Shown here: positions 21,109 to 36,100 of the stretch, piece after piece
How the letters are laid out: each line of letters opens with the position of its first letter
Position numbering within the stretch: position 1 is the stretch's first letter
From: Dimorphilus gyrociliatus
Lineage: Eukaryota > Animalia > Annelida
Assembly: GCA_904063045.1 (NCBI GenBank)
Contig: CAJFCJ010000028.1
Coordinates: 811,230-875,229, forward strand
Reading direction: 5' to 3'
DNA length: 64,000 nucleotides
Notes under the pieces: model-generated
Seen by the model: only the letters and a program-made list of their open reading frames with translations
Told to the model about the DNA's origin: nothing
Database searches by the model: none
Position numbers and translations under genes: made by a program

Positions 21109-23387
21109 CTAATATATATCTTTTTTTAACCTATATTCTTTGATTATTCCTTTTGACAAATAATTAACGTCTTAAGGATTCCAACTTAATGATTGTAGTG
21201 CGGTAGGGAATAGACGACAAGCGTAAAAGGAAAGAATAAATAACGTAGAGAATAATTTAAGGATTTAGGAGGAAAGTTACCGAGATTTTGTGGGACTGTG
21301 GTAGAAAAAAAAAGGAAAGATTCTTTTGGCTAGTCTACTAGTAATTTCTTACTGCTGGTCTGTCATTGTAAGTATCCTATTAAAAAAAGTATATAGAGAG
21401 AGTGGGAGCTGACAAAGGTTTTCAGAGAATAAAAAAAGAGAAGAAATCTCAAAGTCCGAAAGGATGAAGAAGTATATAATCAATTTAGAGAAATAATTTT
21501 ATGACATTTAATAACGTGGGCTACTTATAGAAAATGACGAAATTATTAAGACAGTATTTATATTAAATATTCCCAATTCTTTTCAGTGTGTCCATTTATG
21601 GGCAAATATCTGGGTGAAACTAATAAACTCTATGCAGGGAGAAAAGAAGGTCAGGTGGCTTTTTCAACAGTACGAAAGAAACAAGCGTATAAATGATGAG
21701 CAAAAGAAAATATGAAGAAAGAATAATTTCGTCCTGTACTGACGATTAATCAACCTGCACAATAACTTTCGTACTATTTATTCTATCGATAGCAAAAGGT
21801 AAAAGAATATGGATTGCTGCTTATATTTTAGTCTAAAGGGAAGCATACATTTGAATAGAATTTCAGTCTATTTCTAACTAAATCTAGTAAATTATTCTTA
21901 AAATTTTGAATAATGTAAATACTTCTAGAGAATATCAGATCTATCTCTAAGTCAATCAGTTATTGAACAACAATTTTCAATGTAAATAAATTATTAAAAA
22001 TATAAAGTACTGGGTAAACGTCCTTTTCAATATCTTACTATATTTCTCTTTATTTCTTTTTAGTTTAATACTTAATACTTACTTCATTGACTTAGGATGA
22101 TCCTATGATGTACTTGACTGTTGTATTGTTTTTGAACAAGACAATCGATCAAGATCATCCTATGTCAATGAACGACAAATAATAATGCATGATTTACAGT
22201 TCATACGTCTGTGTGTGTGTATGACTTATAATTCGTGATTCATGTTTATAATCTATGATTTGTGACTCGTAATGGATGAGGTATGAAAGTTAAGATGTAA
22301 AACAGTAGACATGAATGGTGACACAGTTTTGAATTTCGTTAGCTATTGAGTCTTGACCGATGTCAAGCATTCAGATATGGGACAACGAAATAAGTCAAAA
22401 TGATGTATACAACTGGCAAATTTCAGTAGTATACAGTCAACGAGATAAAATAAATTTGACGACGTATCGTACCGACATGTTGTATGACAGAAAACCTATA
22501 ACCAGCTCGATTTAACGTTAACAATTCTGAGTAGTTTTAATCACTTATTGATAATGTATATACTTCTTTCTCAACAGTTAATAATTTAAAATCTACTGCA
22601 ATGTCAATTGCATTATTATTTACAATTAAATGAACTGAATAATACTTAATAGACTCTGTATTTATATTATTATATGGACAAGGTCTATTGTCAAAAACTT
22701 TTACCTATATAACCATATTAAACGGTTAATAAAGTTAAGAAATATATGAAGGAGTCAATGTAGCGATATATCTCTAAATCTAAGTAAGGGATATGAAATA
22801 AGATGATCCGAAAGTAAAAAAGAAACGTACAGTTACAAATGAAGAGGGGAATTTGCCAGATGAAGTAGAGAAAGAAGATGATGACAACAAGTGTTGATTG
22901 AAAATCAATTATTAAAACCGAAGAGTGTCAATTGCCATTGAATTTTGAGGGTATAAACTTGTTGAAAAGAATAGACGAAGTAGTTTAAATGTTTAATTTT
23001 AGGAAGATGAAACAGTCGAAGAAGAAAAAGCCATTATAGTGAAAATGTTGAATGTCTTTTTAAATAAAAAGAAACAATGCTTATAAAAATAGATATATAA
23101 ATAACTAACTAAAGTATGATGTACTATCTTAGACAATAAATTTCTTCATATCAAAGGAATTGAATAAATCAACTCTTGATTAAGTCTCTTCACAACTCTT
23201 GATGTTTATATATTTTATAGGAATCTTTTTTTTTTAGATGTCCCATAAAGCGAATGAAAAACTAAAAAACATGTTAAACAAGAACAGATAAATGTACAGA
23301 CTTTCGTATTGCATACTCTATATACTATATATATACATATATATATATGTATGTTAGCATGAATGTTATATTTTTTTTGTTACTTGG

Positions 23388-26300
23388 TCAATTTAAGGTC
23401 AGATAATTGATAAATAATAAATTTATAACAATTCTATAAAAGGGATGCAATATCTTTGATCGCATAGCAAAGTTTCTACGGGAAATATTTATTTCCAAGT
23501 TATCTTTCGAGTTTGTAGTAATGTTATACTTATAGTTTGAATCGTCACCCCAATGAATCCACCTTCTGGAATAGTAGATAGGCCATGAACGAGGCTCTGA
23601 ATTGCGATTTATTGGCTTGATATATCTATTGCTAATCTTCTCAAACCTCAACTTATTTAACATAAACTTCATTATTTTTTTATTTTCGTTAGCTACGTTT
23701 CTCCGCTCGCAAGGATCCGATTCAAGATCGAATAAGCAGCCACCGTTATTGCACGTTATGTTATTTGGTTCGATATTTTTGCAATCAATTAAAAGGGGAC
23801 GCATTTCGAATCTTCTGCCAATTAAATGTAAACATTTTGCCGCATCGCTTTCTAGTTCGTTCATATCAGCGAAAGGTGCATTCCTTTTGAAAATTTGTCG
23901 TAATTGTTTAAGAATATCTCTCAATTCAGGTTTTGTCGAGTTCAAAAATTGTGTATAATTATTAGTGACCATTTCGAGCACACAGTCGACTGTTGGCTGA
24001 TTAAATTCTTCTACTAAAGTGCTTAGACTAGATCGCACTATCGTTCCATTAAAGCCTTCAAAAATTCGTTGACGACCACGATCATTTCTTTTTGATGTAC
24101 TTTCAGAATTGGTATCCAATAACAATTTCCAATTTTTATATCTATAACCCGATAACTTTGTAATCGGGTCAATATTTAACAGAATAAATAAGCGTTTATC
24201 AGATTCTTTACCACGCATTAAGTCCCACCATTGCTTAAAGCCATCCAGTTGACTTTCCAAACTAAAAAATTTGATATTTGGATATTTTGCCACTTGAAGA
24301 AGAGTTGGTAACCAATCTGTAATGTGCATTAATTGGTTAGATGTGTATCCTTTTTTTCGTTCCGTTGTCCAAATAAAGGCAGTTCCTCGGATCGAACCTT
24401 CCCATAGTTCATTCTGCTTCCCTCTAAATGAAATAGAAAGCAAAACTCTTAACTCTTAACTAGTTAAATCAAATGTAATACAATAAAGTGCTAACTTGAA
24501 TGGATGATTATTATGAAATTGATCGTGTGCTCCGTTGTCAGTTGTGAATACTATGAAACTATTTTGTAAAATATTATTTCTTTGTAGCTCTTTAACTAGC
24601 TTTCCAATAGAATCATCCAAAATTGCCATAAGAGCAGCAAACTTTTGTATATTCGTTATAGTACTATTATGGTAAAAATGTTTAAATCTTCTTAAATAAC
24701 TCTTTGGTATATGTAAATCAGTATGGTATCTTGTATTTGCAGCATGATGTGATATATACATGAACATAGGCTATTTTAGAAGAAATAAACGATTAATTTA
24801 ATGTATAGAATATACATAATATATGTTTACTTACCTTCGATTTATCGCGCTTTTCAATTAAATGTTTAATTCTCTTATCAAAGAGATGTGTGGTGTAACC
24901 AGATATATTAATAGGTTTATCATTTTCAAAGAAATCTATACCCCAACTTTCTCTCTATTCGAATTTATTACAAAACAAAACAAACAAAAATATAAAAATT
25001 TAATTAAGCTTTACAGCTAAAAATGCTGATATCAAATTTCTACTAACTTTGCTCTCATTCTTTGCATGCTCGTGGTTCAGATAATCTACATATTCATTAT
25101 AGAATCCAAATTGGCTATCAAATCCACGTTTTGTTGGGCAATACTCTTCTTTATAATAACCCAGATTCCACTACGTAGGGGATTCAAAATATTTATTAAC
25201 CCTTGTAATTTTTGGTTTGTGATTAGTAGTTTATTAATAATCAATAAAGCATCATTATAAACACAGTATTTTAAGTTGACTTTCTTCACGGTTCATTAAA
25301 TGTTTACTGGTTTTACTAGCAATTTATTCGATTTAGGTTGATAAATAATTCAAACTATTCTCCTTTATTGAAAGGAAGACAATAGCTTTATCTATCTCTG
25401 TTTGCAAATATATTCAGCATGTAAGAAGAGACTATTAACTTACTTTACCAACAAGATGAGTACTATATCCAAGTTCTTTAAGATACTGGGGTAATATCTT
25501 TTCTTTTAAGGGTAAGCCGTATGGTTGATCGGCTAGTATATCTCCATGTTGCAAGCCTATAATAATTCAAAAAGTAGAGAAAAATGAATAATAACGTTAA
25601 CGAAAGATTAATTTGTAAATATTTAGTGTTACTCCTCCAGCTTCCGTGATTATATTTACAATACCAGAATTTTCTACTACATTTTTAAAAAGTTTTTTAT
25701 CTCTTAAAGGCGTTTTCAATCAATTTGTTTGCTATAAGTCAACATGATATAACGCTTAAGGTAGTATAAGCACCACACATGAATATAATGTATAAATATA
25801 TATTAGTATAGGTATACGTAATATATATTCTGCTGTTATACTGTTTATACATATATTGTATATAAAACTTTATCCGTTGTTAATTTCTTTAATATTTCTT
25901 ACTTATTATTGATAAAATCTTACGTAACACTCAATTTATCGCATATTATTACACTATATAGCAATCTCTTATGAACGGAGTGTAACTTTCTACAAACAAA
26001 CTGTTGATTAACAACCCTAAAATAATATTAGTCAGAGAAACAAGAGAGATGAAAATTTCTACCCTAAAATGTGGATATTCATTCGAGTAAATTAGTTTGA
26101 TAGATAAAAGTAGATCCCAAAACTAAATCTTTCATTATTTTCACTATTTATCATGTACACAAAATACGGGATATATATAAACATAAGTATATATATTTAA
26201 ATAGGTATCAATAGATATAGATCCGTGAAAACAACTCTTTATCTTTAAAAATATTATATTATTAGGACTTTAAAATAAAACTATCAGCCATTCTATTCTC

Positions 26301-26915
26301 ATCTAATATGGATGTGTTAAAATTTGATATGTAACTCTATAAATATATAATATTATTTATAAATGTTTTTCGATAATTTAACACAATAAAGAGGTATTCA
26401 ATGGCGTTAATTCGAGCTTTGGGTGATAGCGAAATTGATATAATCATATTGATTGTTAGTAACATTTTAGAGCATCTATTTACCTAGGTGTATAGGGTAC
26501 TTCCCAGTCATTAAGGCAGCTCTGGAACCAGTGGATGTTGGCTGGACATAGTAATTTTTTAATATAATACCATCATAGGCCAAAGAGTCTATATTAGGCG
26601 TTGGTATTTGCTTGGATCCGTGAAAACTGACGTCTTCCCATCCCTTATGGAGAAATAAAGCAAAAAATATGTATTAATCCCGGCTGAGTGTCAATAGAAA
26701 ATCGAAAACGCTAAAAGCTATATAAGTATTGAATAAGCGTCACTTTCACAGCTTCGGCAGTTATTTAATCGATTATTATGAATAAATAATCCAAGAATTA
26801 AGTTACAGGTGTGAAATTAGTAAACTGTACCAACCAAATCATCAACGACTATTAAAAAAATATTTGGCCTTGGACTGCAAAATTGCAAAAGTGATAATAG
26901 CAGTATGCTCCTCAT
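23388..26915 (-). CDS. Arylsulfatase B/I/J-like protein with degenerate active site (7 exons, 635 aa)
   Basis: Exons 26915-26835, 26643-26484, 25556-25444, 25170-25048, 24954-24835, 24770-24496, 24423-23388; all GT-AG and phase consistent (1908 nt). Signal peptide, [77 protein letters not shown]. Confidence 0.93.
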
Positions 26916-29900
26916 CCTCTTTTCTGTTAAATGCAAGATTCGTCTAACACTAGACGGCGCTTACCAGATCTAGATTGATTGATGTAGAGCAAAAAATTGT
27001 TGGCAAAGAGCAATTGTTCAGTATAACGGACATAAAACACGATGTTCAAGCGCTAAGAACATGCTCTTTCCTCCAGATGCTAATATATCGAATTTTAAAA
27101 AGACTGTAAAACTTTAGGGGAATCTGCACGCTGTAATCACTAATCATGGCTAGTCACCCCTTTCAACTCAATTAATTACAATTTCGACCGTTTCTGGACT
27201 ACTCGCATATTAATTACATTAATTAGACGTTCTTCTGGCTCCTTTCTTCATTCTTTGCGATAAACTCCCCCTTTTTTAAGAAAGGTATTTAGCATTCTGG
27301 ACGCCTTTAAATTAAGAGTACATCTACAAATTCCCTCTTCATAAAAGTAGTACAACTCGTTAGTTAGAAGAAAATAATTATTAATTTAATTAATATTAGG
27401 AAGGTGATGCTATGACTTGATTATTCAATACGATTTTTTAATTGAAAAATTATACAGCTATATAAAGTATATATAGAAATATATATATATTTATATACAT
27501 TTTACACTTAATAATTACCCTTATGGTAATACATCTATAAGATTTTATTCTGAGTTTTTTAACACCGTTCAACAATAGTGAAAATGTAAATTTGACGTTT
27601 TTCGTAGTAACACCAACATATTAATCAGAATGTATAAATATATTAGTACGGTATTTAATAATTAGTACAAAAATAAATTCTAACTCTGTTTTGTTATGTA
27701 AATGTAACATTAGAGGTCTAGTTTTCATTCCCTTTCTTCCCTCAATACTTAACGCCTACAACATTTAATCATATAGGAGTGACATCTAGTTGACTATTGC
27801 TAATTTTCGACGATAGGGCTAGTTTCATTTTATTTGCTGTATATATTGTACAACTCTATATCTACATTATACGAGGCATTTACTATGTTTAATAATGCCA
27901 TCTATCGGTTAATTTCTCAACATCAGCTCTGCCTTTATAGAGAAACAATAACCTTAAGAATTTGTAAGTTCTTTTGAAATTTCGTATTCGATTTCTTTGT
28001 TCGTGATATTAGTTAAAATTTTGAAGCTATCCCATTACAGTTTGTTTTAAAAAGGAATAAATTTCAATAAAACAACATTCTTAGAGATATATAGAACAAT
28101 AACAATAAGCCTTCTACATGAGTAAATATTAATAGTTTATACTCTTATAAGTATATTAAACTATTAATAAATATTTCAAGATATTTATATAATTTCTGTA
28201 TCTTTTGTTAGTCTATTCCCAATAGTTTCGGTCTGCCAAACAATAGGACTTAATACTACAAGATTCTTAATAATATATATTTTGTTAGTTATCGATCGAT
28301 AACATATCTTAATGAACGTGAAAAATTTAAATTTTCTCTTTCTTCCTTTTAGTTTATAGAGAGTTATAAAGTCTGTAGTTTATAAAAACTAGAAAAAAAA
28401 GACAAACAACCAGATTCTATCTTGTAGAATGTTTGATGAATTATATTCTATACTAAATATTAACAAGTAAGAGTTTAGCATTTAATTAATATTTATAAAA
28501 CATGAGCTTTTTTTGTTTGTTGTCATTTAGAATGGTTTTTATATAAAATTTCAACAATCACTATCGTATGATTTCTTATGTTTTAATCCTACAATATCGT
28601 CTTTATCGTCTGTAACACTTGATTCGTTATTAACGGTTAAGTAAATTAAATTCTATTAATAGTGTGACGATACCAAAAATCCCCTATTACGATAGCCATT
28701 CAAAGAGACACTGTTAGAAAATAATTGAATATTAAATGTTTGTTTAATAGTGTATTATAAATATATCTATTAATATATTAAATAAATACATAACTCGAAT
28801 TACTTTGCAGTTTTATAAAAAGAGACAATAAATAGTTTCTTTAAACGTTTTAGTCTATTGAAGAGGTCAACGAAAGTCTTAAGCAAAAATCCCTTCCCTT
28901 GTTTTTTCCAGTCACTATTAATTATTGTAACAAAACGTATGATTAATAATTAATCATCTAGTTATAGATCACAAAAGGACAAAATTAAAATGTTACTTAA
29001 TTGCTATTCGAAAGGTAATAAATAAAATTCTTCAAAAAGAAGACTTTTAGAATTTTTTATTTTCACTGCAAAAAAGAGAATGTTCAATCATCGATTCGTG
29101 TAAAATACCGGCTTAATAACTCCCAGAGAGATTGTCTACATTGCTTCTTTCATTACTTAGTTATTTAATAGTCAGGTATATAACATTTTATATCATCATT
29201 CTTTGATAATTTAGCTTAATTATATTTTGTATAACTGACATCTTTTAAAATTTTCTACCAATAATAGATGTTGATTTTTAAAAGAATTTTTACTAAGAAT
29301 TCAATATCTACTATTCAATATGGTTGCATTTAGTTTGTCAGAAATATCAACTTTATTATCTCTCGAAGTTTATTCCCAAGTGATGGATGAAAATTCCCAA
29401 CATATAAAAAAACTATGTCTATATATATTCTAATATAAATTTTGTACTTGTAAATCTTTTCTCCAGAAGCTTTTTTCTAGTAAGAAGGAAGTTTTCTCTT
29501 CTCTTTCTTTTTTTTTGTTTACTTGTTTGTTATTCTAATAAAAATGTTGCAAGTAAAATAAAATGAATAGAAACAAAAGGAAAAGAGAGAAATAAAAAAT
29601 AATAATAAAAAATATAGAAAAGCATGTCTTTATTAACCTAGAAGTCGATGGTTGGATAAAATGACAAGTAACAATTTACCAGCTGGTAACTGAGAGAGTT
29701 CAATCACTTTTGTTACTGTTAATAATATGGACTGCATACAGAAAGAAATTATTCAGAAAATTGTCACTATATAAACTATATATACTGTACATGCAATAAT
29801 AAACTATTGGCAAACAAAAGAAAATCTTAAACTAATGGCAGAAATGAAATTATTCAGATAAGGATTTTATATATAGCGTATGATAGATTATTCAATGTGC

Positions 29901-32809
29901 ATTGCAGATAGGACAATCGCTTTTTCTTAAATTGTTAATAAAGAAATATATAGACTTATCCTTATTTAAAATACATCAAAAGTAATATTGTACAGTAATT
30001 TATAATTAATTCTTCAACTGTAAATACATTGCAGTATTTTCAAAGTTCACATTTTAAAATTTAAACACGCAAACAGTGACCCAAACATTTGGGAAAAGCA
30101 TCCTGATAAATTAATTCACATTGAATGATATAGATCATTTTACTCTAACTAAACAATCCCTAATGACCATGACTTACTTAAAAGAACGAACTGTCTAAGT
30201 TTTTGTTCTTTCTCTTCTTCTATTTCTCTATCTTCCTATTTTTTACATAACCCAAGATGATTATAAAAGGAAGAAAATGATCATTTTAGTATTTTATAAA
30301 TCTTCTTTTTTTCCTATCAATCATATTCGTCTTACGTTGTTAATTAGTAAACTATAATTGACATTTTGCGAACAAAATATCCTAAAATAATATATTAAAC
30401 CAACAATCTTGGAATTGTTATATTGTATTGTTTAATAGTTATTCAAAGATAAGTCCTGAATAAAATTTATAAAGGTAAAGGTCAGATAAAGAGAAAAATA
30501 AATATGTAATTGATATACTATATAATCATCATATCTTATTTTTACACTTTTCATGCCAATTACTTAAATAGCTACAAGCCATTTTCAGTATTTTTATTAA
30601 GATTTTCATAGTTGAATAACATATCTGAAGTCTGAAGGAGAGGAAAGAGACAGATTTTTTTTATTCATGGCAGCTTTTGGGAAAGAAATGTCACAAAATT
30701 TATAACAAAGGGAGAAAGAATTGAGCTTTATCTGATGATTTCCAAGATTTCGCTAGGGACATATTCCAAAAAGACATTTGTGCTGTAGCATGTCCCTCTG
30801 TAGAATTGAAGAAATTGCTTCAAATTATTTACTTCTTTAGGTAAACTTTATGCCAAATGAAAGAAATACATCAGCAATATGTCTATTTAGCAATATTCTT
30901 TCATCTAAACTTCTTTTATTTGGCCCGCGAGAAGGCTACAAAAGTTAGAATGAGGCTAATACAAATAGATGTTGCAGGTAAGAGAATCAAAGCCATATCT
31001 ATAAAAAACATTGCAAACAAAAATTTTAATTATATCTCAATATTTAACTTTCCTATTTCAATGTATTTAGCTAATTTTTATGACAAAAGGTAATTTTAAA
31101 AATGAATAATTAGATATTAATTGTAAATAGCTTAAAAGAAACGTTTTATAATACATAAAATATATAATATAAATACAAATTTTTGTCAAGTAACCTCTTC
31201 TAGTCCTAACAGCAAAGTCAAGCAGCTATTTATCCTCTAGTATCAATAGTATTTTTGAAAGCCAAACTAGAAAATTTCTCTACTAGATGTCTCTATTGCA
31301 AATGGACTGGAACTTTTTTTTTCTTTTCATATAATATTCTGGGAAGATAAAGAGACGTTTTCAAGATTTCATTCTACATGGCATTATAAGTTGTTATCGT
31401 TACTCTTTTATGCTTAATAATAGACAGCATCAAAATTTAATGGAGCAGGAAACCAAGATTATATATTATTTCGAAAATTAAACCTATTATTCGTATAAAG
31501 CAATTTAAACAGCTTTAAACCTGGTGATAATATCGCAGATTATTCTTTTTCCATCCATCATGGTTGAATAGTAACAGCAATTTACATTGAAAGAGATAAA
31601 GATAACAATAGTAAATATACTGTATATATATATATAGATATATTATTATTATTATTTTCTAAAGAAAACAAGCTTCCTACTATCGGAGTTCTTATCTATT
31701 TTGATAAAATGGAATTACTACATATTCGAATATTTTTTTACTTGAATAAGCAATTGGTTTTTTTTTAAATTATCATAAAATATTTAATATAATATATTAG
31801 TATATATATATATAAAACTGCTATTATTGAATTTACTATAATAAGTTAATGAAGTTTTCATTCATTTTAGACTTTATTGATACTGATGAGTTTTGAAGTG
31901 GAGATCATCAAGTTTACATAGACTTAACAGTGTTTGAGTAAAAGAATTGAATATGTCTATAAATAGATTTTCTCCATATTAATGAATTGAGTTTAAAAAA
32001 AAGGACTACAGTTTTGGAACAAATAACAAATGCAATATTACAAATGAGAAATATTAAATAATTAATTCTACCTCTCCATATAAACACAGTTATACGCAAT
32101 AAATCAATAATTATAGTTTCAATTATGTTAAATTAGTATTATATACTTTTCTATGGATATATAGATATACTGTATATATATATATATATTATAATTTATT
32201 AGTATATACATCTATATTTATATTTGCATACTTTTACATAAAAAACGCTTGTACTACTTTATTAACACCAAGAAATTGACCTATTTTACTCGAGAAAGAA
32301 AAAGAAGAAATAGACAAGCTGATACTCCCAAAACACTATTCGGATCGATTGCGATCTCCTACCCCTTGTAAGCCCTATCATTAATATTAAAGCGTTAGAA
32401 ATTTTTTGATTAACAAAATGGGAATGTAGCATAAACATTAAATCAATTAAGCAATAATTACAATATATTAGATATATATATTTTAAAAATTCGTATTATT
32501 ATAGTACCATATTGAATAATTATTAAAATATTTTCTTTTATTACCTGCTTTAATTCCTTTGCAATATCTCTTCAAGATTTGAAAATGGCTTGCTACTATA
32601 TCACATAGCAAGCAACTAAAAATTAGCTTTAAGTGTTATACTTTCTATGACAACTCTAGCTGCGCCCCCTATTTTTTAGTAGTGGAATCGTTTTAAATCA
32701 CTTTTTTTTCAATGTATTTTTTTTTCTTTAGAGTCTTTTTGTTAGATATTCACACGATTAATAAAGGTTTAAGGAGTCGGTGAGAAGATATATTTGCATA
32801 GTTTTCATA

Positions 32810-33085
32810 TACATGTATATATGTATATATTAAAAATTATAGCACATAGATATACCGTATATACAGCACATATATAAGCATATATATATATATATAGATG
32901 TAGTATATTTATATATTTTTATGATACTGTATTCAAAAATTAATATAAATATATGTATGTGCTGCATACTATATATCATATATTCATATATCTTACATTA
33001 TATATACTGTATATACATATATATATATATATACACACACATACAACATACAGACTGCATATATACTGTATATATAATTATATAT
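32810..33085. repeat. Degenerate (TA/CA)n low-complexity tract
   Basis: Interrupted TA, TACA and CA runs just 3' of the C2H2 gene. Confidence 0.85.
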
Positions 33086-33132
33086 AAAGTACGAAATTCG
33101 TCTACAAGAGTTCCAAAAAACGCATAAAAAAT

Positions 33133-36100
33133 TCATATACTAGGTTGAATCTTTTTTTCGTGAACCTTGTTATAATGTTGGGCCATTGCGGTTTGTGTAT
33201 TAAATCTTTCACTGCAGTTGGAGCAAGTAAACTTCATCATATTCCAATGTTTGGTTTTCTTGTGAAGACTCATACCCTAATTAATAAATAATAAACACTT
33301 AATAAATAGATATATATTTATATATTGAAATTTTGCTTATTTTTCTTTCTTTTTATCACTTACTTGAATTGTTTGAAAGTCTTGACCGCAATAATTGCAG
33401 GTATGTCTCAAACCGCAATGCGTCTAGGGCAAAAAAAGACAATTAAATAAATTATATAAATGATAAAATGCTATGATTCTAGCACTAAATCAAGGTTTTT
33501 ATTGAATAAAAAACCTTTTATAAGAATTTTTTCCCTTAAATTCGCCGAGTTTTTTTTCATATTTTATCGGTAATTTTCCAATATTTTACTACTTTTTCCA
33601 ATGCGATAGATGGCGATATTTATTATATTTAAACATTTACCAAAGCAACATATAAGAATTTATTGTTGTTGTTTTTTAGAGATACCGAAAGATGGCGTTA
33701 ATTCTACTTCGCAAAGTTATTACTATATCTCTTTCGTCGTGTTTTTTTTTAATAATAGGTTATATGCAATATGAGATTTAAATACCTGTTGAACGTGATG
33801 TTTCATTGTTCCGTAATGTTTATAAGAAACGTCACACCCTTTCCAAGGGCACATATAACGCCCATTTCCTGACATAACTGGCCTTATCCTTATCTTTCCA
33901 TCCCGTATCTCAGAAACAGTCTGTAGTTTGTCGGCAAACTTGGCCGAAATTTCAGCACTATTATTTTCTGAAGCTAGAAGAGCGAAAAGAGAAATCATTT
34001 ATAAAAAAATCAATAAATCAAACATGTTTTTCTTTAATAACAGTCATAGTAAACTTTGTACACTTTAAGTGAATAGTAACAAATCACTCCTTAAGCCAAT
34101 CCGGCATCATTACGAATCAAGGAATAGGCTTTTTAAATAACATATTTCATACAAATTGCGATTACTTTAGAGCTTTGAATAAAAAGTCCAAATGGCCCTT
34201 AAATGTTACCGATACTCTACAAGTAAGATGAAACTTTAAGAAATATTATTAATCTCGTATAAAAAAATGGCGGGAAAAGGAGACTAGTAATAAGTTGAGA
34301 CTAGGGACAATTCAGAAATTTGATACTTCAATAAAAGTCACATATGCTTTAGATTGATGACAAACAATAGAGTGACGTAACCGAATACTAGTATTCTTTC
34401 ATCCTAAACAATGTTAATATTCTCCCTTTAGTCACAGTTTAATCTGATAACCAAATCCCGCATTTTTCTCTATCTGTGTCTCTCCTTTCTCATATTATTA
34501 GGTCTACTAGCTACAAGAGCTTATTTATGCAAACTATAACTTAAAAGATCTTATTAATTAAAGAGCTTTGATAGGTAAATATTTGTTTTTACGATTAGAT
34601 ATAACATTCTTGTTACTATTTACTTCAAAAAATATTGCCTATGTAATGTATATTTTCGTCTTATAAGTCGGTTTCCTTTTAGTTTGCGATCTATTTATAG
34701 GTTTTAGAAGAAAAAATATAAATAAAATTGCCAAACTAGTATAGAAATTCTACTATAAAAGTTAAAGCATATAGATATCTAGGCTTAAACTCTCTAAACA
34801 TTAATTTAGAAAATAAAAATGAAATAAATTTCAACAGGCTATCAAGGTCGAGTATTGTTCTAAAAGTTACAAAATTGTTTTCCTCGATAGATGGAGTTGT
34901 TAAGCTGCCAGGTTTGATATTCGACGAATGCGTGAAATAAGAGGGAAAGGGGATGGCTAAGGCTAGAGGAGAGATATAGAATGCAAAATTGGATAGAAAT
35001 GGTGTCAGAAAAAATAGTTTAAACTATAACAAAAATAAATAAAATCTAAAAATATACTGATATGAAGATCGAAAAAGATGAGAACTATCTTGGTTTATTT
35101 GGCCGTTGAATGCATAATCTATCAAGAAAGAGATGATAAGTCTGTCTTTCTCCTACTCATTCTTCCTCATTGCTTTAAAGTCAGAAGTTTTCCTTTTTTT
35201 TTTACTTTTAAGAAAAATCTATAAACATCACGTGATAGTTTATTCAGAGCTGTTGTTTAGTTGTATAACTTACATTGTTTATAAAAAACGGTACCATTTA
35301 CTTTTGGTATATCGCTTGACTTTGATTTTGAAGTTGCTTATCTCTATAAACTCAAGGGCTTTAAATTTTTATTTGAATAAATAAAAGAGTTATATAAGAT
35401 ATTATCCAAATCGAAAGGTTTCAGTGCTTTGCTACAAACTGCAAAAATAATGAACCAGTCATGGACTTTTACGACAAAAATTCGGTCGAAGTGTAAAAAG
35501 GAATAAGATAAATGGCTAAGCGGATTTAAAGAATTCATGTGCAACAAGTAACCTCTCAACCTCTACTAAGATCACTTTCAGCTTGACCTCCTAACGGTCT
35601 CCCAAGCTCAAAACATTTGTTTTCTTTTACACATACAGTTTTTTTAGGCGATGAAAAGTCGAATTGGCATCGATTTCCTTCTTTTTATAAAATGAAAACC
35701 TTTTGAGAGCCTTTTTCCTAAAATTCTATTTATAATATTAAAGATGGATAGTAAAAATTGCAAAAGGAGACGGAGAAAGTGAAAAGAATTAGGTTGTTAC
35801 TACATGCAACAACAACCTAAGAAAATAGGCCTTTACATTATATATGCACTATATATATATATATCTTTATATATAAATGATATAGAACACCATCGCCTCT
35901 TATTATATTTTAACATATAATTTGTCTTAAGCCACTAGATTATTGTAGGCTGTTTTTTATACAAAATGTACAACAAACATAAGATCACTTACGCTATGAT
36001 TCAATCAACATTTTCTTTTTTATATAAAATACATTTTAGTATACAAACGATAAATAAGTTTATCTCACGATTTGCGCTATTTTTACATGATATTTTAATT

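What the first reader, a model, noticed from the sequence alone, without database searches (positions are those of the whole stretch)
23388..26915. Intact, secreted arylsulfatase-fold pseudoenzyme: Ser replaces the formylglycine Cys and three further catalytic residues are lost
Seen: the CxPxR motif reads S-T-G-S-R (26535-26521); GKWHLG reads GKWNLG; the His at the end of the YLAHQAVH-type motif is Asn (ISHHAAN); the Lys in RGxKxxLWEG is Gln ([10 protein letters not shown]). Metal ligands (VVDDL, TDNG), the motif Arg and the GK Lys remain; all seven exons splice in phase, with a signal peptide and a hydrophobic C-terminal tail. Established: eukaryotic SUMF1/FGE converts only Cys in CxPxR; Ser-type sulfatases are bacterial and need a radical-SAM maturase; Cys-to-Ser ARSA/ARSB mutants trap a covalent sulfo-Ser intermediate; other alkaline-phosphatase-superfamily members use Ser/Thr nucleophiles directly. 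Inference: a selected non-sulfatase function, such as a binder or trap for sulfated glycans or a repurposed phosphoesterase, possibly GPI- or membrane-anchored.
Basis: partly seen in the sequence, partly recalled or inferred. Interest (0 to 1): 0.75.

Follow-up and report, generated by a model that had tools for sequence, protein, structure and literature searches.

The report
Conserved dead arylsulfatase-B-like protein in a worm
The tiny marine worm Dimorphilus gyrociliatus expresses, and has kept under selection, an arylsulfatase-B-like protein that has lost four catalytic residues but kept its metal site; similar Cys-less copies are already recorded in insects, so it is a solid but not unprecedented pseudoenzyme.

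Summary
**Observation: confirmed.**
- Window 23388-26915 (minus strand) holds a seven-exon, GT-AG, in-phase gene of Dimorphilus gyrociliatus.
- Its closest solved relative is human ARSB (1FSU).
- Against 116 animal homologues, CxPxR reads S-T-G-S-R, GKWHLG reads GKWNLG, H242 is Asn and K318 is Gln.
- The metal ligands D53/D54/D300/N301, plus R95 and K145, are kept.

**It is not a decaying pseudogene.**
- RNA-derived contigs of one public run splice exons 2-7 exactly as modelled. No letter differs from the window.
- An orthologue in another species (Logan contig L001) has identical exon lengths.
- That orthologue lost the same four residues, with other replacements at two of them (H147 is Q, K318 is G).
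- Neutral DNA between the two species is saturated, yet dN/dS is about 0.03 in the STGSR exon and about 0.1 for exons 1-6.

**The family context lowers the surprise.**
- 22 of the 116 homologues (Hymenoptera, beetle Sulf2, a termite) also carry Ser at the FGly site. Ahn et al. 2019 described this.
- Membrane-anchored ARSB-like proteins are also known.
- The worm clade arose independently and is more degenerate than the insect ones.

**Gaps.**
- The function is untested; I favour a non-hydrolytic binding role.
- The public model (435 aa) lacks exons 1-5.
- Exon 1 has no RNA support.
- The scan has not reported this gene before.

The parts
23388..26915 (-). Whole coding region of the ARSB-like pseudoenzyme gene: 7 exons, about 635 codons. 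The public model DgyrCDS13972 covers only its last 435 codons.
26835..26915 (-). Exon 1. It holds the ATG, a 14-residue hydrophobic leader (26915-26874) and the first strand, with metal ligands D53/D54 (VVDDL; 26843-26838).
   Evidence: It is 78% identical in the L001 orthologue with the same length and donor. Substitutions are biased to synonymous sites, p = 0.0003. No RNA contig lies here.
26484..26643 (-). Exon 2, carrying the degenerate sulfatase signature.
   Evidence: Pfam Sulfatase E = 6.9e-8. 1FSU E = 1.3e-13. 91% identical in L001 with dN/dS 0.03. RNA contig has no differing letter.
26521..26535 (-). S-T-G-S-R in place of C-T-P-S-R. Ser sits at the formylglycine position, Gly replaces the Pro, and R95 is kept.
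   Evidence: The orthologue has the same residues with a synonymous Ser codon (TCC versus TCT).
25444..25556 (-). Exon 3. It ends with K145 (25446-25444), which is kept.
   Evidence: Spliced to exons 2 and 4 in RNA contigs.
25048..25170 (-). Exon 4. It starts W-N-L-G, with Asn (25167-25165) at the H147 position. The orthologue has Gln.
24835..24954 (-). Exon 5.
24496..24770 (-). Exon 6. Asn (24737-24735) sits at the H242 position (ISHHAAN). Metal ligands D300/N301 are kept (T-D-N-G, 24539-24534). The near-invariant Arg equivalent to ARSB R263 is replaced.
23388..24423 (-). Exon 7. Gln (24416-24414) sits at the K318 position. It also holds the rest of the core, a low-confidence insertion of about 100 residues, the C-terminal subdomain, a roughly 50-residue extension with N-x-S/T sequons, and the stop (23390-23388).
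23391..23441 (-). Hydrophobic extreme C-terminus (last 17 residues). It is a candidate GPI signal or membrane anchor.
   Evidence: Mean Kyte-Doolittle 1.2 here and 2.4 in the orthologue's last 15 residues. Position is conserved; sequence is not. The AF2 model ends in a helix, 396-434 of P0001.
26916..27359 (-). Conserved non-coding block upstream of the ATG (about 77% identical to the orthologue). It has TAATTA-type motifs and a palindrome CGTCTAGTGTTAGACG about 35 nt before the ATG. Probably promoter or enhancer.
   Evidence: No Rfam match.
26644..26834 (-). Intron 1, 85% identical to the orthologue where aligned. That is more conserved than most exons.

Best explanation
This is an expressed, selectively maintained pseudoenzyme derived from an arylsulfatase-B-like (S1 family) sulfatase.

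**Shown.**
- The fold-defining and metal-binding residues are kept.
- The formylglycine precursor Cys and the Pro that the maturase FGE reads are gone. So are the three residues that bind the sulfate and protonate the leaving group (H147, H242, K318).
- The same set was lost before the worm and a second lineage diverged, and the gene has been under purifying selection since.
- That selection is strongest on the exon that carries the altered signature.

**Inferred.**
- It no longer hydrolyses sulfate esters.
- It enters the secretory pathway through its N-terminal leader.
- It is held at a membrane, by GPI or a tail anchor, through its hydrophobic C-terminus.
- It acts without turnover, most likely by using the preserved Ca-type pocket (D53, D54, D300, N301, Ser91, R95, K145) to bind an anionic ligand. 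That ligand is probably sulfated, and it sits on the cell surface or in the matrix.
For: **Family and fold.**
- Pfam Sulfatase on exons 2 and 6.
- Best solved relative is 1FSU, by sequence and by fold of the exon 6-7 model.

**Residue pattern.** (Fisher p = 0.003).

**Expression and splicing.** Contigs of run X1 join exons 2-3, 3-4 and 4-5-6-7 at the modelled borders with no differing letter.

**Orthologue L001.**
- It has seven exons of the same lengths, all GT..AG.
- It has STGSR, AHHAAN, GKWQLG and a Gly at K318.

**Selection.**
- Introns 4-6 and the flanks are at shuffled-control identity, so neutral sites are saturated.
- pS is 0.63-0.87.
- dN/dS is 0.03 (exon 2), about 0.08 (exons 1 and 3), 0.24-0.30 (exons 5 and 7) and 0.10 over exons 1-6.

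**Loss of activity.**
- H125N abolished activity of the beetle homologue PcGSS2 (PMC6823443).
- Cys-to-Ser sulfatases are used as inactive substrate complexes (6psm and 7pth).

**Tail.**. Beetle ARSB-like proteins with a C-terminal membrane segment are membrane-bound (PMC6823443).
Against: - No ligand, location or phenotype is known, so binding is inferred only from what is conserved.
- Two of the three usual sulfate-binding side chains (H242, K318) are gone, which should weaken sulfate binding.
- The K318 loop differs at four of five positions between the two orthologues, so that part of the pocket is not constrained.
- A conserved His four residues after the H242 position could have taken over its role.
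- Exon 1, and thus the leader, lacks RNA support.
- The worm's tail is only moderately hydrophobic, and no GPI or signal-peptide predictor was available.
- The full-length model could not be folded, so the pocket was not inspected.
- RNA evidence is one run, contigs only.
Confidence: 0.6

Rival explanations
1. It is a repurposed enzyme. Ser91 acts as a direct metal-activated nucleophile, as Ser/Thr do in other alkaline-phosphatase-superfamily members (alkaline phosphatase, NPP, LtaS/EptA). The substrate would be a phospho- or other ester.
For: - Ser sits exactly at the nucleophile position, and the four metal ligands plus R95 and K145 are kept.
- The segment around it is the most constrained in the protein (dN/dS 0.03).
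- Exon 2 and exon 6 give weak Pfam matches to Phosphodiest and DUF229.
Against: - The metal site keeps the Ca-type Asp-Asn pair rather than the Asp-His or Zn/Mn ligands of the Ser/Thr enzymes (established knowledge; sequence).
- No general acid or base is left at the three lost positions, and two of them carry different residues in the two species.
- The weak Pfam hits are far below cut-off.
Confidence: 0.13
2. It is still a sulfatase. Ser is converted to formylglycine by an unknown route, and displaced residues (for example the conserved His four positions after H242) replace the lost ones.
For: - His is conserved at RYH/KHH, and HMMER pairs it with ARSB H242.
- The review PMC10211241 records 'migrated' catalytic residues in other pseudoenzymes.
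- Insect Ser-type homologues keep all other catalytic residues, which hints that some Ser forms may work.
Against: - The Pro of the FGE recognition motif is lost in both species, whereas the insect Ser forms keep it.
- No Ser-type maturase is known in animals (PMC6823443; PMC5066984).
- The H147-equivalent change alone abolished activity in a homologue.
- The K318 loop is unconstrained.
Confidence: 0.06
3. It is an ordinary pseudogene or an assembly or annotation artefact.
For: The public annotation calls only the last 435 codons, and exon 1 has no RNA contig.
Against: - Spliced RNA contigs link exons 2-7.
- The seven-exon frame is intact in two species whose neutral DNA is saturated.
- dN/dS is far below 1.
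- The chance of an open frame is about 2e-24.
Confidence: 0.02
4. The gene is retained mainly as a bystander. Its 5' half hosts conserved regulatory DNA for itself or for a neighbouring developmental gene, and the protein's own role is minor.
For: - The 444 nt upstream, intron 1, a 122-nt block of intron 2 and intron 3 are conserved, while other introns are saturated.
- The flanks are ORF-poor.
Against: Regulatory conservation does not explain the strong excess of synonymous over non-synonymous change in the exons. Nor does it explain the intact frame of exon 7, where no non-coding conservation is seen.
Confidence: 0.05

Closest known systems
Human arylsulfatase B (N-acetylgalactosamine-4-sulfatase, PDB 1FSU; SulfAtlas S1_2)
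   Same: - Best sequence and fold match.
- Same core, same metal ligands D53/D54/D300/N301, and same R95 and K145.
- An N-terminal hydrophobic leader for the secretory route; for the worm protein the route itself is inferred.
   Different: - Cys91 is Ser, Pro93 is Gly, His147 is Asn, His242 is Asn and Lys318 is Gln.
- It has an insertion of about 100 residues and a 50-residue C-terminal extension with a hydrophobic end.
- It is about 635 residues. 1FSU chain A has 492 residues.
Insect Ser-type and Gly-type arylsulfatase-like proteins (coleopteran Sulf2 clade, lepidopteran SulfB; Ahn et al. 2019, PMC6823443), plus the aculeate Hymenoptera Ser clade seen here
   Same: - They are animal ARSB-like proteins with Ser (or Gly) at the formylglycine position and a predicted secretion signal (PMC6823443).
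- Function is unknown.
- The Hymenoptera clade also ends in a hydrophobic tail.
   Different: - The insect forms keep Pro93, H242 and K318, and mostly H147.
- The worm clade lost all of these.
- In the tree it lies apart from the insect clades on its own long stem, so it is an independent origin.
Beetle Sulf4/GSS membrane-bound arylsulfatase-like enzymes (PcGSS1-5)
   Same: - They are about 615-635 residues, with a leader and a C-terminal membrane segment.
- PcGSS3-5 carry the same His-to-Asn change in GKWHLG and have barely detectable activity.
   Different: - They keep the Cys, H242 and K318, and some are proven glucosinolate sulfatases.
- Their hydrophobic segment is followed by a short tail, whereas the worm's is at the very end.
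Laboratory Cys-to-Ser sulfatase mutants (for example PsS1_19B C77S, 6psm; choline sulfatase C54S, 7pth)
   Same: Ser sits at the nucleophile position. The proteins bind substrate without turnover (titles).
   Different: They are engineered single changes with the rest of the site intact. The worm protein is natural and has lost three further residues.

Membership tests
Type I (formylglycine-dependent, S1) sulfatase, ARSB-like subfamily | Sulfatase / alkaline-phosphatase-like fold | tested here: met
   Pfam PF00884 on exons 2 and 6. 1FSU is the best hit by sequence and by fold of the exon 6-7 model.
Type I (formylglycine-dependent, S1) sulfatase, ARSB-like subfamily | Signature C/S-x-P/A-x-R, with Cys in eukaryotes | tested here: not met
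   It reads S-T-G-S-R in both orthologues. Among the 116 homologues the Pro column holds Pro in 109 and Ser in 3 (4 gaps), never Gly. SulfAtlas gives Pro 87%, otherwise mainly Ala.
Type I (formylglycine-dependent, S1) sulfatase, ARSB-like subfamily | Catalytic His147, His242, Lys318 (ARSB numbering) | tested here: not met
   N/Q, N/N and Q/G in the two orthologues, against 108, 116 and 114 of 116 homologues. There is an alignment caveat for H242.
Type I (formylglycine-dependent, S1) sulfatase, ARSB-like subfamily | Metal ligands Asp53, Asp54, Asp300, Asn301, plus Arg95 and Lys145 | tested here: met
   All are kept in both orthologues.
Type I (formylglycine-dependent, S1) sulfatase, ARSB-like subfamily | Formylglycine present and sulfate-ester hydrolysis | not testable with these tools
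   This needs mass spectrometry and enzyme assays.
Insect Ser-type arylsulfatase-like clade (Sulf2 of PMC6823443) | Ser at the formylglycine position with the other catalytic residues intact | tested here: not met
   Ser is present, but H147, H242, K318 and Pro93 are lost.
Insect Ser-type arylsulfatase-like clade (Sulf2 of PMC6823443) | Falls inside that clade in a tree | tested here: not met
   The pair sits on its own stem of 1.18 among Cys-type chelicerate and hemichordate sequences. Starred branches force at least five separate Cys-to-Ser changes. The tree used only the exon 6-7 region, a quick search and skewed composition.
Pseudoenzyme (fold kept, catalytic motif lost, gene maintained) | Loss of catalytic residues together with purifying selection and expression | tested here: met
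GPI-anchored or tail-anchored surface protein | N-terminal leader plus a hydrophobic segment at the extreme C-terminus after a polar spacer | tested here: inconclusive
   Both features are present and conserved in position. The worm's tail is only moderately hydrophobic. No predictor was run and no omega site was assigned.
Ser/Thr-nucleophile alkaline-phosphatase-superfamily esterases or transferases | Ser/Thr nucleophile with Zn/Mn-type ligands (Asp-His) | tested here: not met
   A Ser nucleophile candidate is present, but the ligand pair stays Asp-Asn. The ligand rule is from established knowledge, not tested here.

The most novel reading that the evidence does not exclude
Animals have repeatedly turned ARSB-like sulfatases into membrane-tethered, Ca-dependent readers of sulfated glycans. 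In effect these would be a lectin class built on a dead sulfatase pocket. The dinophilid protein would be the most stripped-down example, and the Ser or Gly forms of Hymenoptera, beetles, moths, ticks and a snail would be parallel cases.
Probability: 0.2. Interest if true: 0.7.

Novelty: new variant of a known kind. Interest (0 to 1): 0.4.

Why it matters
Sulfatases are absent from the pseudoenzyme review I searched (PMC10211241), and a search for papers combining sulfatase, pseudoenzyme and formylglycine found none. No function is known for any animal Cys-less sulfatase-like protein.

This gene is a clean case:
- Four catalytic residues are gone.
- The metal site is kept.
- Constraint is strong on the altered signature.
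- The host is a culturable worm with a tiny genome.

It could therefore serve to find out what such proteins do. It also corrects the public gene model, which lacks the five exons that hold the active site. And it shows that the statement 'eukaryotic sulfatases always use Cys' fails repeatedly in animals.

Tried and rejected
1. **Ordinary pseudogene or artefact.** Rejected by the spliced RNA contigs, the intact orthologue and low dN/dS.
2. **Member of the insect Ser clade.** Rejected by the tree and the residue pattern.
3. **A full-length transcript-derived protein in the databases.** None was found. The word searches with exon 7, P0001 and P0002 and the exhaustive HMMER search gave only the 435-aa public model and the orthologue's exon pieces.
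4. **More members of the dead clade.** None appears among the best 150 representatives of 1.84 billion proteins. The next hit is a canonical Cys-type ostracod protein.
5. **Paralogues in the window.** None. tblastn with three homologues hits only this gene.
6. **Conserved intron or upstream blocks as RNA genes.** No Rfam match and no covariation.
7. **Neighbouring ORFs.** No Pfam match.
8. **Notes of this scan on SUMF1 or arylsulfatase in this genome.** None.
Not possible, because no paralogue was in hand. The orthologue was used instead.
10. **The species behind L001.** It could not be named (Logan assemblies of SRR23372229 and SRR23372216).
Full report
**What is there**

- Reading the minus strand of 23200-27100 gives a seven-exon gene.
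- The exons are 26915-26835, 26643-26484, 25556-25444, 25170-25048, 24954-24835, 24770-24496 and 24423-23388.
- Every intron is GT..AG, and the phases fit a single frame of about 635 codons.
- Pfam finds Sulfatase (PF00884) on exons 2 and 6.
- The best solved relative of exons 2 and 7 is human arylsulfatase B, 1FSU; for exon 6 it ranks third.
- The window is Dimorphilus gyrociliatus. The deposited protein DgyrCDS13972 (P0001, 435 aa) is 100% identical to the product of exons 6-7 from an internal Met. The public model therefore lacks exons 1-5, the part that holds the active-site signature.

**The residues**

I placed each exon translation as a separate fragment on an alignment of 116 full-length homologues.

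- Kept: D53, D54, R95, K145, D300 and N301 (ARSB numbering).
- C91 is Ser, at 26535-26533.
- P93 is Gly; 109 of 116 homologues have Pro.
- H147 is Asn; 108 of 116 have His.
- H242 is Asn; all 116 have His.
- K318 is Gln; 114 of 116 have Lys.

Of 86 columns that are at least 90% invariant in the family, the worm keeps 76. Seven are changed in both this gene and its orthologue. Four of those seven are active-site or motif positions, an enrichment with Fisher p = 0.003. The others are an Ile-to-Phe change, the Arg equivalent to ARSB R263, and LWEGG becoming LWEGS.

One caveat concerns H242. A pairwise HMMER alignment to 1FSU opens a four-residue gap and pairs ARSB H242 with the His of RYH. That His is conserved in the orthologue (KHH), so a displaced His cannot be excluded.

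**It is expressed and spliced as modelled**

- The only public run that holds the locus (X1; kind not recorded, kept as contigs) has contigs that skip introns 2, 3, 5 and 6 exactly at the modelled borders.
- Those borders read CT..AC on the plus strand.
- One 1617-nt contig joins exons 4, 5, 6 and 7.
- No letter differs from the window, including over the STGSR codons.
- A lower-depth contig retains intron 3.
- Exon 1 and the upstream region have no contig.
- This is a single run with contigs only, so it shows presence and splicing but not expression level or strand.

**An orthologue shows selection**

- A 6.4-kb Logan contig from another species (L001, run SRR23372229; also seen in SRR23372216) encodes a 44%-identical exon 7 (P0002).
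- tblastn of each window exon finds all seven exons in order.
- Exon lengths are identical (81/160/113/123/120/275 nt), and every border is GT..AG.
- It reads STGSR (Ser codon TCT, against TCC in the worm), AHHAAN and GKWQLG, and has Gly at the K318 position.
- The four losses therefore predate the split. Two of the positions have since drifted to different residues.
- Neutral DNA is saturated: introns 4-6, the 3' flank and the far upstream align no better than shuffled controls.
- pS is 0.63-0.87.
- dN is only 0.04 in exon 2 (dN/dS 0.03). dN/dS is about 0.08 in exons 1 and 3, 0.24-0.30 in exons 5 and 7, and 0.10 over exons 1-6.
- Because dS is saturated, these ratios are upper bounds.
- Exon 1 lacks RNA support but shows a coding pattern: 11 synonymous against 7 non-synonymous differences, p = 0.0003.

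**How unusual is it?**

- 22 of the 116 homologues carry Ser at the formylglycine column and three carry Gly.
- These are aculeate Hymenoptera, beetles (including Psylliodes sulf2) and a termite, plus a ladybird and a tardigrade for Gly.
- They keep Pro93, H242 and K318.
- Ahn et al. 2019 (PMC6823443) already described the beetle Sulf2 Ser clade and the moth SulfB Gly clade, with function unknown.
- The same paper described His-to-Asn in GKWHLG of PcGSS3-5, and showed that H125N abolishes PcGSS2 activity.
- It also showed that ARSB-like proteins with a C-terminal membrane segment are gut-membrane enzymes.
- SulfAtlas lists only two eukaryotic Ser cases (PMC5066984).

A tree of the exon 6-7 region puts the worm pair on its own long stem (1.18 changes per column). 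It lies among Cys-type chelicerate and hemichordate sequences and away from the insect Ser clades. At least five independent Cys-to-Ser changes are needed. The tree used a quick search, covers only part of the protein, and the two worm-clade rows (P0001, P0002) have skewed amino-acid composition.

The exhaustive HMMER search found no further member of the worm's clade among the best 150 cluster representatives of 1.84 billion proteins. It did find other, separate degenerate copies in a sand fly, a tick and a snail.

**Architecture**

- Both orthologues start with a short hydrophobic leader just before the first strand.
- Both end with an extension of about 50 residues that carries N-x-S/T sequons and a hydrophobic extreme C-terminus.
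- Mean hydropathy there is 1.2 in the worm and 2.4 in the orthologue.
- An AlphaFold2 model of the deposited 435-aa part has mean pLDDT 71.
  - It is confident over the sulfatase core and the C-terminal subdomain.
  - It is unconfident over an insertion of about 100 residues.
  - It ends in a long helix.
- Its best structural match is 1FSU.

**Mechanism**

Shown: the fold and metal site are kept, the catalytic set is lost, the gene is expressed, and it is under purifying selection that is strongest around the altered signature.

Inferred: it does not hydrolyse sulfate esters. This rests on four points.
- The Cys is gone.
- The FGE recognition Pro is gone.
- The H147-equivalent change alone kills a homologue.
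- No Ser-type maturase is known in animals.

My preferred reading is a secreted, membrane-held, non-hydrolytic binder that uses the remaining Ca-type pocket. Laboratory Cys-to-Ser sulfatases hold substrate without turnover (6psm and 7pth).

Three things weigh against this reading.
- Two sulfate-binding side chains are lost.
- The K318 loop is unconstrained.
- There is no functional test of any kind.

The rivals are a Ser-nucleophile esterase (about 0.13), residual sulfatase with migrated residues (about 0.06), a bystander of regulatory DNA (about 0.05), and a pseudogene or artefact (about 0.02).

**Left out**

All searches used single exons by reference or the deposited 435-aa model. The pocket could therefore not be modelled.

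**Verdict**

This is a real, well-supported pseudoenzyme and a new, more degenerate variant of a kind already noted in insects. Interest is moderate.

Noticed in passing
window 25037-27359 (also L001 1712-4339): A cluster of conserved non-coding DNA lies over the 5' half of the gene. The 444 nt upstream are about 77% identical to the orthologue and intron 1 is 85%. A 122-nt block of intron 2 (26106-26223) is 87%, and intron 3 about 67%. Introns 4-6 and the flanks are at the shuffled-control level. The blocks are rich in TAATTA and GGATTA motifs, so they look like enhancer or promoter sequence. There is no Rfam match and no covariation.
   Followed up: partly
window about 26941-26956, minus strand: A palindrome CGTCTAGTG(T/G)TAGACG sits about 35 nt upstream of the ATG, inside a 25-nt stretch that is nearly identical in both species.
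   Followed up: no
window 24496-26915: The deposited model DgyrCDS13972 (435 aa) starts at an internal Met of exon 6 and omits exons 1-5. RNA contigs link exons 2-7.
   Followed up: yes
window 25141-25473: A lower-depth contig of run X1 (8 against 20-31) retains intron 3, one of the conserved introns. Retention would stop the frame just after K145.
   Followed up: no
homologues P0027-P0146: All 13 aculeate-Hymenoptera Ser-type ARSB-like proteins that end in a hydrophobic tail have a GPI-signal-like ending, and so do their Cys-type sisters. Separate multiply degenerate ARSB-like models occur in a sand fly (P0206), a tick (P0207), a snail (P0153) and a JGI metagenome protein annotated arylsulfatase A-like (P0248).
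   Followed up: partly
window 27400-33700: A stretch of about 6 kb upstream of the gene has no ORF of 90 aa or more. This is unusual for this compact genome, and nothing was identified there.
   Followed up: no
window 24653-24651 (exon 6, Ile of T-N-I-Q-K): The near-invariant Arg of the family (ARSB R263; 114 of 116 homologues) is replaced in both orthologues by different residues (Ile, Glu). I do not know its role.
   Followed up: no
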